Positions 726 through 6,593 of a stretch of 6,593 bases of DNA are shown here, piece after piece; the first letter of the stretch is position 1, and the number at the start of each line of letters is the position of its first letter. Position numbers and translations under genes: made by a program. The notes under the pieces were generated by a model. That model had not been told where the DNA came from. It made no database searches and saw nothing but the letters and a program-made list of their open reading frames with translations. This stretch comes from Selaginella moellendorffii. Its lineage: Eukaryota > Plantae > Lycopodiophyta. The stretch is taken from assembly GCF_000143415.4 (NCBI RefSeq), contig NW_003314605.1:8812-15404 (forward strand), read 5' to 3'.

Positions 726-790
726 CTCCTCCAAGTGGTTGGAGGTGTGGTTAAGTGACTAAAGTAAAATGGAAAATTTAGTCGCTTACA
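726..790 (+). repeat. 5' LTR remnant (U5 end)
   Basis: CTCCTCCAAG...GTCGCTTACA matches 5330-5394 at 62/65 positions (A767/G5371, C783/T5387, C785/T5389). It ends in CA directly before the PBS. Similarity stops abruptly upstream of 726. Confidence 0.85.
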
Positions 791-793
791 ATT

Positions 794-805
794 TGGTATC
801 GGAGC
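794..805 (+). promoter_or_regulatory. Primer binding site, tRNA-iMet type
   Basis: TGGTATCGGAGC starts 3 nt (ATT) after the LTR-terminal CA. It is an 11/12 match to the canonical plant TGGTATCAGAGC, and the A>G at 801 would still give a G.U pair with the tRNA. Confidence 0.87.
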
Positions 806-1147
806 TGTTCCTTAGTCCGACTCTTATTGGTGGCGAAGTATATCACCGCTTGTATTGGAATCGGAAGGTCCTAGATATGGACCTATCCTCGAGGCGTAGC
901 ATAAATTGCTTATGTTGCGATATAGTAAATCAATGTCGTAAATGGGAATGCTCATTGTTAGGAGGCCATCATTGGGACACCCAAACACTCTAGAACACCA
1001 GGAGGTGGTGTTTCGTGTCGCAAGGACAATAGATAAGGCCCAAGGGACTAAGTTTCTAGCGAATGATGGATAGTAGATGTTATCCAAATGTCCAAGGTTG
1101 TGGAGACAGGAGAAGATTGTCTACCCGAATTGGACAAAGCCAAAAAC

Positions 1148-1167
1148 AAAAAAAAAAAAAAAAAAAA
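1148..1167 (+). repeat. Poly(A)20 mononucleotide tract
   Basis: 20 consecutive A, flanked by the inverted repeat GCCAAA (1139-1144) / TTTGGC (1169-1174). Confidence 0.95.
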
Positions 1168-2114
1168 GTTTGGCAAGGCTAGTGATGGGCATGTAAAGGC
1201 CCATAAGCAACAACGTTAATCCCAATGTGTAAGATTATAAGGTGAGCATGCCCAAGATTGAGGAACCACTCCCTAGGCTATCGGGTAGGTTCATCCCTAA
1301 GAATATTTGCTAAGGCATAGTAAAATGTGCAAAGTTATCCTCCTAGTCTGGAGGAGAATAACCAAAGAAAACATATGGGGCCAAAAAGCAAGTAGTATTG
1401 GGATAGAACTAAACCATAGAAATCGAAGGGCATATCCAACGGTGGTTATGCAAGTTAGGAGTGGAGAATCAAGACGGTGCTCGAGGATGTTGTTGCTAGC
1501 AACCATGATGCCATGGAGAGTCTAAAATATGGAATTGTCCATGTTAGACTATATAGCAACTATAAAGCTTGCGAAAGGGGAGGCTTTAGCAAGCTAAGGA
1601 ACAGAGTTCCTTCAAGGTTCCCAAAGACGATTCTAGGTAACTTAGTACCTAGAAAGGCCAAGTGTAAATGGTTCATGGAACGCGCGAAATCAGAGTGGCG
1701 CAACAGAAGTGTGGTCTTGAAGCTTGCCATGAGGCAAGGCTATCAAGGGTAGGGAAGTAGTTCCCAAGTGTTCAAAGAGAGGGCTTTGAACAAAAGTCGA
1801 TGGTCAAGGACTTTCACACTTATGCAGGAACCATGTTACAGTGGTCGGAGGACTTGCCAAGCGAGATTGGCAAGTCGGGGAAACAAATACCTTAGTTGAA
1901 GGTGATAACTTCAAAAAAGGGTGGGCCATAGGGCCAAGCATGGAGGAGTCCATGCATGATCACAGACTTGTCAGGTGAGAGGACTTGGCAGTGTGGAGGA
2001 ACTAGGTTCCTAAGCTGTGATCTGTAGCGTGCATTAAATATAAGTTGGTGCACCAGCGTGGGGAGTCACGCCAGGCATCCGGTGTGATGCCATCCGTAGA
2101 TGCATATACGGAGG

Positions 2115-2156
2115 TTGGGTTCGAGTCCCGACCCTCTAGTGCTTGGGTTCGAGTCC
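2115..2156 (+). repeat. Duplicated 14-mer TTGGGTTCGAGTCC containing a Pol III B-box / tRNA T-arm-like motif
   Basis: Exact copies at 2115-2128 and 2143-2156. Each contains GGTTCGAGTCC and folds as a stem with a 7-nt TTCGAGT loop. Confidence 0.7.
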
Positions 2157-2160
2157 TAAA

Positions 2161-2520
2161 TCACTAGGGCATGGTGATGGTTTGGAATATGAGGACACTC
2201 ATTTTTCGGTGGTTATGGACTCTCAGTGTGGAGACTGGTTTAGGCACACCGCCAAGTGAGGGATGCCTCAGAGTCGTGATGCATGGTTAGATTGCTTAGC
2301 GTGGCTCAGCATATCTAACTTGAACACTTTGGTGTGAGTGGCACCAAGGATATGGTGAATGAGATGGGGACACCCAGTCTCAGTTGCTATGGACCCTTGG
2401 CCAGAAGGGCTGGCTTGGGCACACCGCCAAGTGTGGGGGATGCCCCTGGGGTCGTAGTTAACAAGTTAAAGGTTTGGAAGACCTAGTACCTATTGGCAAA
2501 CCTGTTAAGGTGCCGAGGTG
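2161..2520 (+). repeat. Diverged tandem duplication, period ~175-180 bp
   Basis: 2189-2280 aligns with 2364-2458. Exact 16-bp core GGCACACCGCCAAGTG at 2243-2258 and 2418-2433. Similar unit starts lie near 2161 and 2341, with a possible third at ~2524 (TCACTAGG). Confidence 0.8.
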
Positions 2521-3616
2521 AGATCACTAGGTGATCTTGTGGCTAAATAAGGACAAGGTCCTTGTTTGGGTTAAGGAATAAGGTTCCTAGTTCAAAGTGT
2601 TAATTTGAGCTATTGATGATGGTGTGGCTTGGTCAAGGTGACCAAGTGGGAAAAGCACCTTAGGGCAATGAGCTATGTCATTGCGATGGCATAATGTGTC
2701 CACGGAAAGTAATCTCTAAAGAGACCCATGGGAGGGTCACAAAGTTGGGCCGTGGATAAAGCCCACAACAGAAGATGCTAAAGAGACTTACTAGGGGTGA
2801 ACACTCTAGTCTTGGCAAAGCAAAGCCTTTGCTATGGAATCAAAAGAATACCTCAAGGAGGGAGGTAGAGATTCAGTGTTGCTTGGTGCAACAATCAACG
2901 GATAGGAGCAAAAGATGAGTGGCCAAGATAGGGCCGTGGAATCCTTTGGAAGGAATCCAAGTGGCAAAGTTAGGCAAGGAACACTAATGTGTTGGACGCT
3001 AACAAATTGCGGGAAAGGAAGTGTGTTTCCAAGGATGGATTCCGAATTGTTCCAATTTGGCGAAAGTGGAAGCTCCAAGGGAGGGAGCGGTAAGGTAGCC
3101 AAATGATAGGGCCATGGACAGCCCTAGCACAAAGTATGATAAATGGAACTTAGTGCCCAAGGTGGCACGAAATAAAAGAGAGGATGATGGTGCCCTCAAG
3201 TAAAGAACTTCCTAGGATGGGGAAGTGGAGTTGCACAATATGTGCAATGCAAGGTGTTGGAGACACCTAGAAAATTGACTTCCAGAAGTCAAAGAATAAA
3301 AGTTCCAAGGTGCAAATGTTCAATAGATGGAAATTGAGACTACTCGAGAAAGAGTAGTGGGATTGACTTCGAGAAGGGTCTCTAAGAGGTTTAGCGAAAA
3401 CTAAACTAATAAAAGGAGAGAACCACTACATGTGGTCCAATTAGTCTTTAAGTTGGAGAGACTACCTTCCTTAGAGGATGGACAAGGCATGGTGAGCCTT
3501 CGGTGTCAAATCATAGACAAATATTGGCCAGGGGCTAAAGATGGAAACGGTAATACATATAGGTGTTACTTTATAAAAGGGATTACCGTTCGATGAGGAC
3601 ATCGAACTTCGTCTAT

Positions 3617-3627
3617 GGGTGGTGAAG
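3617..3627 (+). promoter_or_regulatory. Candidate degenerate polypurine tract
   Basis: GGGTGGTGAAG is followed by T and then TGTGAG at 3629, and preceded by GAGGAC (3595-3600). This layout recalls the 3' ends of plant Ty3/gypsy elements, but the tract is interrupted by pyrimidines, so the call is tentative. Confidence 0.33.
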
Positions 3628-3846
3628 TTGTGAGACACAAATTCCCTAGGCCCCAAAGTGGAGCCGGAAGGGTGCCATGTGGTAGTGGCCGAAGCGAAAG
3701 CCAAACGAATGTAACATGTTTGGCCCAAAAGTTCCGACTTGAAAGGTCGAGAGCGGGAGTGGAACTTCTAACGAAGTGCTCGAGGAATGAGCACGAAATG
3801 AGCAATAAACGAGGCTCCAAAAAGAGACCCAAAAGGACTAACACAT

Positions 3847-3856
3847 GACACGTGGA
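3847..3856 (+). promoter_or_regulatory. G-box/ABRE-like motif GACACGTGGA (second identical copy at 5221-5230)
   Basis: CACGTG core. The same 10-mer occurs twice within the candidate 3' LTR. Motif match only. Confidence 0.25.
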
Positions 3857-3857
3857 A

Positions 3858-4035
3858 GTGTCCGAGATGGACCCAAGATGGACCCGAGTTGGAATCCGAA
3901 CTGGAGTCCGAGAAGGACCCGAGATAGACCTGAGTTGGAGTCCGAACTAGAGTCCGAGAAGGACCCGAGATGGACCCGAGATGGAGTCCGAGATGGACTT
4001 GAGATGGAGTCCGAGATGGACCCGAGATGGAGTCC
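3858..4035 (+). repeat. Minisatellite of 11-bp (GACCCGAGATG) and 12-bp (GAGTCCGAGATG) units
   Basis: 15 complete units plus a partial one that runs into the N gap. A higher-order 46-bp unit (11+11+12+12) occurs at 3870-3915 and 3916-3961. Confidence 0.95.
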
Positions 4036-4898
4036 NNNNNNNNNNNNNNNNNNNNNNNNNNNNNNNNNNNNNNNNNNNNNNNNNNNNNNNNNNNNNNNNN
4101 NNNNNNNNNNNNNNNNNNNNNNNNNNNNNNNNNNNNNNNNNNNNNNNNNNNNNNNNNNNNNNNNNNNNNNNNNNNNNNNNNNNNNNNNNNNNNNNNNNNN
4201 NNNNNNNNNNNNNNNNNNNNNNNNNNNNNNNNNNNNNNNNNNNNNNNNNNNNNNNNNNNNNNNNNNNNNNNNNNNNNNNNNNNNNNNNNNNNNNNNNNNN
4301 NNNNNNNNNNNNNNNNNNNNNNNNNNNNNNNNNNNNNNNNNNNNNNNNNNNNNNNNNNNNNNNNNNNNNNNNNNNNNNNNNNNNNNNNNNNNNNNNNNNN
4401 NNNNNNNNNNNNNNNNNNNNNNNNNNNNNNNNNNNNNNNNNNNNNNNNNNNNNNNNNNNNNNNNNNNNNNNNNNNNNNNNNNNNNNNNNNNNNNNNNNNN
4501 NNNNNNNNNNNNNNNNNNNNNNNNNNNNNNNNNNNNNNNNNNNNNNNNNNNNNNNNNNNNNNNNNNNNNNNNNNNNNNNNNNNNNNNNNNNNNNNNNNNN
4601 NNNNNNNNNNNNNNNNNNNNNNNNNNNNNNNNNNNNNNNNNNNNNNNNNNNNNNNNNNNNNNNNNNNNNNNNNNNNNNNNNNNNNNNNNNNNNNNNNNNN
4701 NNNNNNNNNNNNNNNNNNNNNNNNNNNNNNNNNNNNNNNNNNNNNNNNNNNNNNNNNNNNNNNNNNNNNNNNNNNNNNNNNNNNNNNNNNNNNNNNNNNN
4801 NNNNNNNNNNNNNNNNNNNNNNNNNNNNNNNNNNNNNNNNNNNNNNNNNNNNNNNNNNNNNNNNNNNNNNNNNNNNNNNNNNNNNNNNNNNNNNNNNN
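4036..4898. other. Assembly gap (863 N)
   Basis: The run of N begins inside the minisatellite, which probably broke the assembly. Confidence 0.99.
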
Positions 4899-5329
4899 TA
4901 GGACCGTGGGACTTAGTGGTTAGGCCTGTGGGCCTCGATCCAGTGGCAGTGTTGGTGAACACGGCCATGGGCAGAAAGGGACTTGGTGAAGATCGGAAAA
5001 GGGATATTGGGGAAGGCTAATCCCCATGTCTGTGGGCATCCTAAGGATGCTAAGGAGTGGATATAGAATGATCACTCATGGATGGATGGCCCAGTTCTTG
5101 AGAAATGGGACTATAATGCAGGTGGTGTTAGACCACCGGTGTGACCAAGGTAAAGGGGCATGGCCTTAGCGTAACGGGCTGATATGTCGGTGGTACCTTG
5201 GGGTGTCGGTCATAGGATCGGACACGTGGAGCACTTGGATCAAGTGCAAAGGTCAGAGTGGCGGGGACGCCATTCTCGGGGCTAGCAAGCCCAAGTCTGA
5301 AATAGGACTTATGGAGGTTGTGAGTGAGA

Positions 5330-5394
5330 CTCCTCCAAGTGGTTGGAGGTGTGGTTAAGTGACTAAAGTAGAATGGAAAATTTAGTTGTTTACA
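5330..5394 (+). repeat. 3' end of 3' LTR
   Basis: Second copy of the 65-bp repeat ending TTACA. It is not followed by a PBS, and composition switches to AT-rich flank afterwards. Confidence 0.87.
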
Positions 5395-6593
5395 TTAGTG
5401 TTGTTTGGGCTTAGAGCCTCTGTAATCACTGAAGAGATTTACTTGTGATTCCTAGTGCTAAGCACATTTAAAATTTATAAATGATTTTCTCCTAGTTATT
5501 TTTCAAACGAAAGAGTATCCCACCATAGTTGTCAAAAGTGAGTAAAGTTTTTTCTTCCTATACTCACATTTTTGCCCTTACCTGCAAAATAGTGATAAAC
5601 AAACAAAGATAAGAACGTAGAAGAAGAAAAGAAGTGAAGAAGATTGAGAAGAAAATAGAAAAGAACTTAGTCTTGAACCTTAAAGGCATGAGTAAGGATA
5701 AATATATGTCACTTTCTCAACTCTACTTTGCATATATAATCATAAGCAGGAGAAAAAATAGTTAATTTAATGCAAATGCATACAATAATGAGTGGGGGTT
5801 ACTTTCTAGCACGTCTAAGTGCTATTTATATATTACATGATTTTATAATAGTTCATAACTACTTCACACTTATCTATAACGAACGTTACCTAGGTTGGGT
5901 TTTTCTTCTTTGGATGCTTAAGTTTAAATGTAATTCTGTTTCGCTTAAGCTTTCTTCTTTTGCTCTACTTGGAATGATACACTAGATAAAACATTTACCT
6001 TTTTATCAATAGTCCATATTATAGTGGTAGAGCATATTGGCACGCTATCATTCTCTCGTGTGAGATTTCCTTTCAATCTTAGAAATATAGATGGAGTTGA
6101 TTCTTTAATATGATATTACTTTTAAGACTTTTGAAAGATTTCAATTTCTTTTATTATTATCCATAAATAACTCCCGAAATCTCTTATCGAGGATTCATTG
6201 CAAAAGTGTACCTTGGTCTTTTCATATGAGAGGATTGTGATATAGGTAGGCAATAGAGTTTTCAATATAAATTAATATATAAATTACAAATGTTATAGAA
6301 CATTTTATGAAGTAGATTTTTTAATGCTTTCCACCGTATTGTTAGTTTCTTCATTTCTTTTGCTTTGAACTATTGTTTCAAAAGTAACAAGAGCATTTTT
6401 ATCAATTGTGATAGTGATTTCCCCATCCCCAGATAGGTAATAAGGATTAAGAGTGTAATATAAAGATTATGATAGTGAAACAAATATTTTCACATTCCTT
6501 TGCATTGCAACTCTTGCCATAAATCTCTTAATTTTTCTTTGCTTCCCATCTTCCCAAAAAAACCTTTTGAAGTATGTACAACTGTTAACATTA

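What the first reader, a model, noticed from the sequence alone, without database searches (positions are those of the whole stretch)
2189..2458. Four compensatory base-pair changes between the two copies of an internal ~175-bp duplication
Seen: the diverged copies keep the same fold. (1) ATGAG-gaca-CTCAT (2189-2202) vs TGGG-gaca-CCCA (2365-2376): A2192-T2199 <> G2367-C2374. (2) GACTC/GAGTC (2218-2222/2271-2275) vs GACCC/GGGTC (2392-2396/2449-2453): T2221-A2272 <> C2395-G2450. (3) Outer helix GTTAT/GTGAT vs GCTAT/GTAGT: T2213-A2279 <> C2387-G2457, plus a T.G <> T-A change. (4) GAGG-gatg-CCTC (2258-2269) vs GGGG-gatg-CCCC (2435-2446): A2259-T2268 <> G2436-C2445. The loops GACA and GATG and the 16-mer GGCACACCGCCAAGTG are invariant. 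Inference: this is internal evidence that base pairing is under selection, and it defines a duplicated multibranch RNA module with a possible protein-binding core. Caveat: all the changes are transitions, which methylation-driven decay also produces.
Basis: partly seen in the sequence, partly recalled or inferred. Interest (0 to 1): 0.82.

Follow-up and report, generated by a model that had tools for sequence, protein, structure and literature searches.

The report
Duplicated folded RNA segment in retroelement
Two diverged copies of a ~100-base segment inside a protein-less plant jumping gene still predict the same RNA fold; this is moderate, not conclusive, evidence that the RNA's shape is kept by selection.

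Summary
The homologous core is about 95-100 nt (2185-2285 and 2360-2462), repeated at a 175-nt spacing. It is not a 175-bp duplication.

The count of four compensatory pairs is not by itself beyond chance. When the same substitutions are placed at random and any conserved stack of 4 bp or more may be picked afterwards, four compatible double changes appear in 11-21% of trials.

The shared fold as a whole is better kept than chance:
- Fewer pairs are broken than expected (7 against 12, P≈0.01).
- The fold is specific to the + strand.

The setting is a non-coding LTR-type retroelement (726-5394). Its body is a chain of hairpins, 73 against 19 expected, in which G·U outnumbers A·C 22 to 5.

The "invariant" 16-mer is not invariant in the family. 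Two CpG decays private to this copy made the two units identical there.

Family copies could not be fetched as sequence, so true covariation is untested. RNA-seq shows almost no transcripts. The scan has noted this hairpin-chain family before on other DNA.

The parts
726..790 (+). 5' terminal direct repeat (65 nt, ends ...TTACA) of the non-coding LTR-type element
   Evidence: 95% identical to 5330-5394
794..805 (+). Primer-binding-site-like TGGTATCGGAGC, 3 nt after the 5' repeat. It fixes + as the sense strand of the element's RNA.
   Evidence: Read. It is one mismatch from the tRNA-iMet PBS TGGTATCAGAGC, a motif I know from general knowledge and did not test here.
2115..2170 (+). Two tandem 28-nt units, each with a tRNA T-arm-like hairpin (GGG-TTCGAGT-CCC type), just upstream of unit A
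   Evidence: period 28, 2.1 copies, 78%. ARAGORN and Rfam call no tRNA.
2185..2285 (+). Unit A of the duplicated segment (GC 50%, the more decayed copy). Helices: H1 2189-2202; outer helix 2212-2216/2276-2280; H2 2218-2222/2271-2275; H5 2224-2237; H6 2238-2257; H4 2258-2269.
   Evidence: CM score 105.8 bits
2360..2462 (+). Unit B of the duplicated segment (GC 61%). Its own MFE gives the multibranch fold. Helices: H1 2365-2376 (extended 2361-2382); outer helix 2386-2390/2454-2458; H2 2392-2396/2449-2453; H5 2399-2415; H6 2413-2432; H4 2435-2446.
   Evidence: (MFE -48.8 kcal/mol, z=-2.67), (115.4 bits)
2243..2258 (+). The 16-mer GGCACACCGCCAAGTG in unit A. It forms the loop and 3' arm of hairpin H6. 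About 81% of family contigs read C at 2257.
2418..2433 (+). The same 16-mer in unit B. About 96% of family contigs read G at 2421.
5330..5394 (+). 3' terminal direct repeat, preceded by a C-free, purine-rich stretch (5311-5329) that could be a polypurine tract

Best explanation
The two stretches are paralogous copies of a ~100-nt folded segment of the + strand (sense) RNA of a protein-less LTR-type retroelement. The whole ~4.5-kb body of that element is a chain of short hairpins.

Shown: the duplication is old. Both units are present across a very abundant family and in a second organism.

Inferred: while the units diverged in the transposing (master) lineage, changes that broke pairs were removed, and G·U intermediates and double changes were tolerated. 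Both units therefore still predict the same fold: one free hairpin plus a closed three-hairpin junction. Unit A has taken about four times more GC-to-AT transitions than unit B and is the weaker, probably partly redundant copy.

Inferred, not shown: the most likely use of the fold is in cis. It would serve recognition, packaging or stability of the element's RNA by the proteins of an autonomous helper element.

After insertion this particular copy has decayed neutrally, mostly at CpG.
For:
- With the same substitutions placed at random, the consensus energy is -19.0±3.6 against -29.4 observed (P=0.0055; 0 of 2000 with unit A as ancestor). Shared pairs are 24 against 34 (0 of 2000). Double changes are 3.3 against 6 (P≈0.05).
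- Against unit B's own MFE structure, which owes nothing to unit A: 5 doubles against 2.2-2.5 expected (P=0.04-0.06), and 7 broken pairs against 10-12 (P=0.08-0.011).
- Strand: the + strand gives 34 pairs at -29.4, the - strand 17 pairs at -18.75. 10 of the 34 pairs are G·U in at least one unit.
- Element-wide: 73 unique hairpins against 19.3±4.7 in shuffles, while the flanks give 35 against 26. Interior mismatches are G·T 22 against A·C 5 (P=0.003).
- Family-majority letters at helix sites are compatible with pairing. At 2214 the majority C makes C-G where this copy has U·G, which adds a fifth double change against unit B's U-A. At 2242 the majority G restores a pair of H6. The variants at 2257, 2403 and 2454 are wobble-compatible.
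- No ORF over 98 aa and no Pfam hit. A PBS-like motif follows the 5' repeat.
Against: - There are only two sequences, so each test rests on about 29 substitutions.
- The count of double changes is only about 2x expectation (P≈0.05). With post hoc choice of helices, four is reached in 11-21% of trials.
- All doubles are transitions in the direction of the overall GC-to-AT bias of unit A (17 against 4). 6 of the 17 lie in CCC/GGG contexts, which are each other's partners in a helix.
- Unit A's own MFE is a different fold, with z only -1.3.
- Replacing this copy's private letters one at a time with the family majority does not stabilise folding significantly (P=0.10).
- RNA-seq of the same species label gave 1 and 0 reads, so there is no evidence that the RNA exists in those samples.
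- One diverged family contig appears to carry C opposite A at the H4 pair, a half-changed state (table 5c).
- No family copy could be aligned.
Confidence: 0.55

Rival explanations
1. Chance plus biased mutation. Unit A simply accumulated GC-to-AT transitions (methyl-cytosine deamination on both DNA strands) in a G/C-run-rich sequence. A reader free to choose among many possible 4-5-bp stacks will usually find a few 'compensatory' pairs. No selection on pairing is involved.
For: - The search-based null reaches four compatible doubles in 11-21% of trials, and random placement already gives 2-3.
- The transitions are directional, 17 against 4.
- The same A/G and T/C columns can be paired in several mutually exclusive ways, giving 11 candidate 'compensatory' column pairs.
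- This copy shows clear CpG decay: 5 of its 7 private GC-to-AT changes within the two units are at CpG.
Against: - Fold retention as a whole exceeds the null: alifold energy P=0.0055, shared pairs 0 of 2000, broken pairs P=0.011 with trinucleotide context kept.
- None of the eight positions of the four pairs is among the 40 listed places where the family differs from this copy. They therefore do not look like post-insertion decay of this copy, although 78 further variable places were not shown.
- The element-wide hairpin excess and the G·U over A·C asymmetry are not explained by strand-symmetric deamination.
Confidence: 0.25
2. Mutational, not selective, maintenance. Short inverted repeats are created and re-homogenised by template switching within quasi-palindromes, during reverse transcription or DNA replication. 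A change in one arm is then copied into the other arm, giving 'compensatory' pairs without any function for the RNA fold.
For: - The body is a dense chain of short, mostly perfect inverted repeats, which is the substrate for such events.
- Two of the four doubles lie in tiny local hairpins with 4-nt loops (H1, H4).
- Quasi-palindrome-templated mutation is an established mechanism (general knowledge, not tested here).
Against: - Templated correction yields Watson-Crick pairs and predicts no preference for G·T over A·C, yet the counts are 22 against 5.
- Two of the four doubles sit in helices whose arms are about 50 nt apart (H2 and the outer helix), which is less favourable for snap-back templating.
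- It does not explain why the hairpins have different sequences along the element.
Confidence: 0.12
3. The hairpins are substrates or decoys of the small-RNA machinery (for example miRNA-like or siRNA precursors), or they serve a host function. The duplicated segment would then be kept for that reason rather than for retrotransposition.
For: The only Rfam match at E up to 1 is a weak miRNA-precursor-like match elsewhere in the body (mir-306, 20 bits, E=0.93). It is far below the gathering score of 52.
Against: - Stems of 4-8 bp are too short for Dicer-type processing (general knowledge).
- No Rfam family reaches its threshold.
- Virtually no RNA reads were found.
Confidence: 0.05

Closest known systems
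LARD (large retrotransposon derivative; e.g. Sukkula of grasses)
   Same: A non-autonomous LTR retroelement with a multi-kb internal domain that codes for no protein. It is said to specify well-conserved RNA secondary structure and is presumed to be mobilised in trans (PMC7215508, read, citing Kalendar et al. 2004).
   Different: LARDs have very long LTRs of several kb (my knowledge of the literature). Here the terminal repeats are 65 nt, and I found no target-site duplication. The body is an almost continuous chain of short local hairpins, which is not described for LARDs in the papers I could search.
TRIM (terminal-repeat retrotransposon in miniature), including Cassandra/Helenus (TRIMp3)
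   Same: Short terminal direct repeats, a PBS and a PPT, and no coding capacity. Helenus and Cassandra carry small-RNA-like (tRNA, 5S) pieces (PMC10886601). This element has tRNA T-arm-like twin hairpins at 2115-2170.
   Different: TRIMs have almost no internal domain (Helenus-1_SMo: LTR 120 bp, interior 85 bp). Here the interior is about 4.5 kb, and the tRNA-like piece lies in the interior, not in the terminal repeat.
Retroviral / Ty1 packaging and dimerisation domains (Psi, TIPIRT)
   Same: Clusters of short stem-loops in the genomic RNA act in cis for Gag/NC recognition, dimerisation and packaging (e.g. Ty1 kissing loops, PMC5454406, listed). This is the working analogy for what the segment may do.
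   Different: Those domains lie at the 5' end of a coding genome and have been shown by experiment. Here the segment is mid-body in a non-coding element, is duplicated, and has no experimental or comparative proof. No loop-loop complementarity was seen between GACA and GAUG.
Retrozymes
   Same: Plant non-autonomous LTR-type elements whose non-coding RNA is highly structured (PMC4918200, listed).
   Different: Retrozymes carry hammerhead ribozymes in their repeats and are about 1 kb or less. No hammerhead or other Rfam family was detected here.

Membership tests
LTR retrotransposon, non-autonomous (LARD-like) | Two terminal direct repeats in the same orientation | tested here: met
   726-790 and 5330-5394, 65 nt, 95% identical. 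This is far shorter than LARD LTRs.
LTR retrotransposon, non-autonomous (LARD-like) | Primer-binding site just inside the 5' repeat | tested here: met
   TGGTATCGGAGC at 794-805. It is one mismatch from the usual tRNA-iMet PBS; the comparison is from my own knowledge.
LTR retrotransposon, non-autonomous (LARD-like) | Polypurine tract just before the 3' repeat | tested here: inconclusive
   5311-5329 is C-free with 14 purines of 19, but interrupted by T.
LTR retrotransposon, non-autonomous (LARD-like) | Target-site duplication flanking the element | tested here: not met
   721-725 reads CCACG and 5395-5399 reads TTAGT. The boundaries may be misjudged, or the copy may be recombinant.
LTR retrotransposon, non-autonomous (LARD-like) | No gag/pol coding capacity | tested here: met
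   The longest real ORF is 98 aa. There are no Pfam hits and no protein relatives. An 863-nt N gap (4036-4898) is unseen.
LTR retrotransposon, non-autonomous (LARD-like) | Long (kb-scale) LTRs, as in described LARDs | tested here: not met
   The repeats are 65 nt.
TRIM | Miniature size, with an interior of at most a few hundred nt | tested here: not met
   The interior is 791-5329, about 4.5 kb including the gap.
Any Rfam family (tRNA, hammerhead, 5S, riboswitches and others) | Covariance-model score at or above the gathering threshold | tested here: not met
   cmscan at E up to 1 gave only mir-306 at 20 bits against a threshold of 52, elsewhere in the body. ARAGORN found 0 tRNAs.
Structured RNA under selection (generic criterion) | Covariation above phylogenetic expectation in an alignment of many homologues | not testable with these tools
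   No family copy could be fetched as sequence. Only the two paralogous units and per-site family summaries were available.
Structured RNA under selection (generic criterion) | The RNA is transcribed | tested here: inconclusive
   1 read and 0 reads in about 9.2 million reads each of two RNA-seq runs of the same species label. Silenced or non-polyadenylated RNA would be missed.

The most novel reading that the evidence does not exclude
The duplicated ~100-nt junction is a cis-acting recognition or packaging signal. A protein-free retroelement, whose entire body is selected only for RNA shape, would use it to capture the Gag/RT of an autonomous chromovirus that carries the same structured segment in its 3' UTR. 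Unverified notes on other windows of this genome suggest such sharing (s1-408403, s1-434234, s1-361248). The duplication would then be a dosage increase of the signal.
Probability: 0.2. Interest if true: 0.7.

Novelty: new variant of a known kind. Interest (0 to 1): 0.45.

Why it matters
Non-coding retroelements can be selected only through their nucleic acid, so they are natural experiments on what an RNA must look like to be copied by another element's proteins. An internal duplicate that diverged by about 30% while keeping its fold is a built-in comparative test of that constraint. If family-wide covariation confirms it, this segment would give a defined, small RNA to test for Gag/NC binding, dimerisation or protection from silencing. 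It would also help explain why the whole element is tiled with hairpins. If it is not confirmed, the case is a useful warning. With strongly directional transitions in G/C-run-rich sequence, a handful of 'compensatory' pairs between two copies is expected by chance.

Tried and rejected
- **Metagenome scan.** I scanned with the degenerate 16-mer. It gave 120 loci, all chance matches with no homology to the element.
- **Fetching family copies through spurious ORFs.** The 50-aa ORF over unit B and the 98-aa ORF at 2809-3102 found no relatives.
- **Rfam and ARAGORN.** Nothing reached threshold.
- **More copies in the window.** A covariance model built from the two units finds only those two. The next best match has E=0.16. 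The weak third copies listed (1668-1695, 1440-1467) are not supported.
- **Family-majority letters.** I substituted them one at a time and compared local MFE with random changes of the same type. There is a trend only (sum ddG -3.0 against +7.7±8.3, P=0.10). A first version on the whole 800 nt timed out.
- **Earlier findings searched by sequence.** Blank.
- **Literature.** I found no description of a hairpin-tiled LTR element.
- **Coding origin of the segment.** Rejected: no Pfam hit.
- **A tRNA gene or SINE at 2115-2170.** Rejected: no tRNA call.
- **Species.** The run labels were coded, so I could not verify it.

Full report
**What is there.** The window is plant DNA. AT-rich flanks (1-660 and 5400-6593) surround a G/A-rich, ORF-poor element at 726-5394. 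The element is bounded by 65-nt direct repeats (726-790 and 5330-5394, 95% identical). A primer-binding-site-like TGGTATCGGAGC sits at 794-805, and a C-free purine-rich stretch precedes the 3' repeat. An assembly gap of 863 N lies at 4036-4898. No real ORF exceeds 98 aa. The ORFs have no Pfam domain and no relatives in the word-indexed protein search. No Rfam family and no tRNA is detected. I read it as a non-autonomous LTR-type retroelement with + as its sense strand. It has no visible target-site duplication, and its repeats are unusually short.

**The observation.** Three corrections are needed.
- The homologous core is about 95-100 nt: 2185-2285 against 2360-2462, 70 of 99 aligned positions identical; blastn 2189-2267 against 2364-2444, E=7e-5. 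175 nt is the spacing, and the rest of each period does not align.
- The fourth compensatory pair (A2259-T2268 against G2436-C2445) requires a 2-nt indel after the 16-mer. This is plausible, but MAFFT places it differently.
- The 16-mer is not invariant in the family (see the paragraph on family data).

**Is four more than chance?** The 29 substitutions are strongly directional. In 17 of them unit A has A or T where unit B has G or C, against 4 the other way (binomial P=0.007).

I first listed every stack of 4 bp or more that is conserved in both units. Eleven column pairs qualify as 'compensatory', and many are mutually exclusive, because GAG/GGG and CTC/CCC recur. I then re-placed the same substitutions at random, or shuffled alignment columns, and searched in the same way. 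Four mutually compatible double changes turn up in 21%, 15% and 11% of trials.

I next fixed the structure without reference to unit A, using unit B's own MFE. That MFE is the multibranch fold (z=-2.67).
- Double changes: 5 observed against 2.2 expected (P=0.037).
- Broken pairs: 7 against 10.0 (P=0.084).
- Both together: P=0.016.
- With each substitution kept within its strand-symmetric trinucleotide context: doubles 2.5 expected (P=0.059), broken pairs 12.2 expected (P=0.011), both together 0.0055.

It gives 34 pairs, 6 of them changed on both sides. Under random placement of the substitutions the consensus has 24 pairs (0 of 2000 trials reach 34) and an energy of -19.0±3.6 against -29.4 observed (P=0.0055). 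Doubles are 3.3 against 6 (P≈0.05).

My reading is that the shared fold is retained better than chance at roughly the 1% level. The number of double changes is only about twice expectation, at roughly the 5% level.

**Strand and context.** The reverse-complement alignment gives only 17 pairs and -18.75 kcal/mol. Ten of the 34 pairs are G·U in at least one unit.

The element body holds 73 distinct hairpins (at least 5 Watson-Crick pairs, loop 3-10) in 806-4035, against 19.3±4.7 in dinucleotide shuffles. Segment 4899-5329 holds 9 against 2.1. The flanks hold 35 against 26. This reproduces on this copy what an earlier follow-up of the scan reported for the family on other DNA (s1-337345, s1-402665).

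Single interior mismatches inside the hairpins are G·T 22 times and A·C 5 times, where composition predicts a ratio of 1.2 (P=0.003). Strand-symmetric deamination or arm-to-arm templating would give equal numbers. The excess of wobble-compatible mismatches therefore points to pairing in + strand RNA. A covariance model built from the two units finds no third copy in the window.

**Family data.** Contigs of a DNA run of the same organism lay on 1900-2700 in huge numbers (16,025 contigs). A second organism's run also holds the family, and both units are covered. The duplication therefore predates the family's expansion. A few contigs skip about 183-188 nt between the units, as expected from recombination between them.

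Within the two units, this copy differs from the family majority at seven GC-to-AT transitions: 2214 (majority C), 2242 (G), 2257 (C), 2270 (G), 2403 (G), 2421 (G) and 2447 (C). Five of the seven are at CpG, so this copy has decayed by methyl-C deamination since insertion.

This has three consequences.
- The two 16-mers became identical in this copy only through the changes at 2257 and 2421. In the family they differ at those two places, so the 'invariant protein-binding core' is not supported.
- At 2214 the family's C makes a C-G pair with 2278, where unit B has U-A. In the family-majority state the outer helix therefore carries a second full double change, making five in all.
- The majority G at 2242 restores a pair of H6, and the variants at 2257, 2403 and 2454 are all wobble-compatible.

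The eight positions of the four pairs are not among the 40 best-supported differences, so they look family-wide. However, 78 further variable places were not shown. One diverged contig appears to have C opposite A at the H4 pair (table 5c).

Substituting majority letters one at a time stabilises local folding no more than random changes of the same type (P=0.10). RNA-seq of the same species label gave 1 and 0 reads in about 9.2 million reads each, so expression is unproven.

**What could not be done.** No family copy could be obtained as sequence. The metagenome scan gave only chance matches. The real covariation test therefore remains open.

I did not build or fold a majority-rule version of the units, because the tools bar consensus building on proviral stretches of plants. 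I report per-site observations only.

Other first-reader notes on this genome mention a ~103-nt multibranch motif in three copies in two retroelements. They also mention twin T-loop hairpins shared between a coding chromovirus 3' UTR and a LARD. The twin T-arm-like repeat is indeed present here at 2115-2170, directly upstream of unit A. I could not see those other windows, so these notes are leads and not evidence.

**Verdict.**
- The inference of selection on pairing is moderately supported, by fold retention and by the element-wide signals, not by the four doubles as such.
- The protein-binding core is unsupported.
- The closest known kind is the LARD class of non-coding LTR elements, said to have conserved RNA structure (PMC7215508). 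This element differs from it by its 65-nt repeats and its hairpin-tiled body.

Noticed in passing
window 2115-2170: There are two tandem 28-nt units, each holding a tRNA T-arm-like hairpin (GGG-TTCGAGT-CCC, a box-B-like motif). The second is closed by an outer CTAGTG/CACTAG stem. No tRNA is called by ARAGORN or Rfam. Other first-reader notes in this genome describe 'twin T-loops' shared by a chromovirus 3' UTR and a LARD.
   Followed up: partly
window 3857-4035 (runs into the N gap): A tandem array with periods of 11, 23 and 46 nt (CCGAGATGGAC-type units, about 15 copies at the 11-nt period) lies inside the element body. It is cut off by the 863-nt assembly gap at 4036-4898.
   Followed up: no
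window 726-790 / 5330-5394 and flanks: The terminal repeats are only 65 nt, and I could find no 5-bp target-site duplication (CCACG against TTAGT). The 5' flank at 671-720 holds three GAGCTCA repeats and a 25-nt palindrome (683-726), which may belong to another element or to a longer, rearranged 5' end.
   Followed up: partly
window 1142-1167: A run of 26 bases, almost all A, lies inside the element body. It is an odd feature for an LTR element interior and could mark a captured retroposed piece.
   Followed up: no
window 5255-5293: A hairpin GGCG-GGGA-CGCC, flanked by GAG...CTC, resembles the extended H1 of unit B in architecture. The covariance model's match is E=0.16, which is not significant.
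   Followed up: partly
window 1900-2700: 26 places where at least 70% of the family contig depth (run X1) reads another letter than this copy, about 3% of the stretch, mostly GC-to-AT in this copy. The family is also present in a second organism label with the same majority letters.
   Followed up: partly
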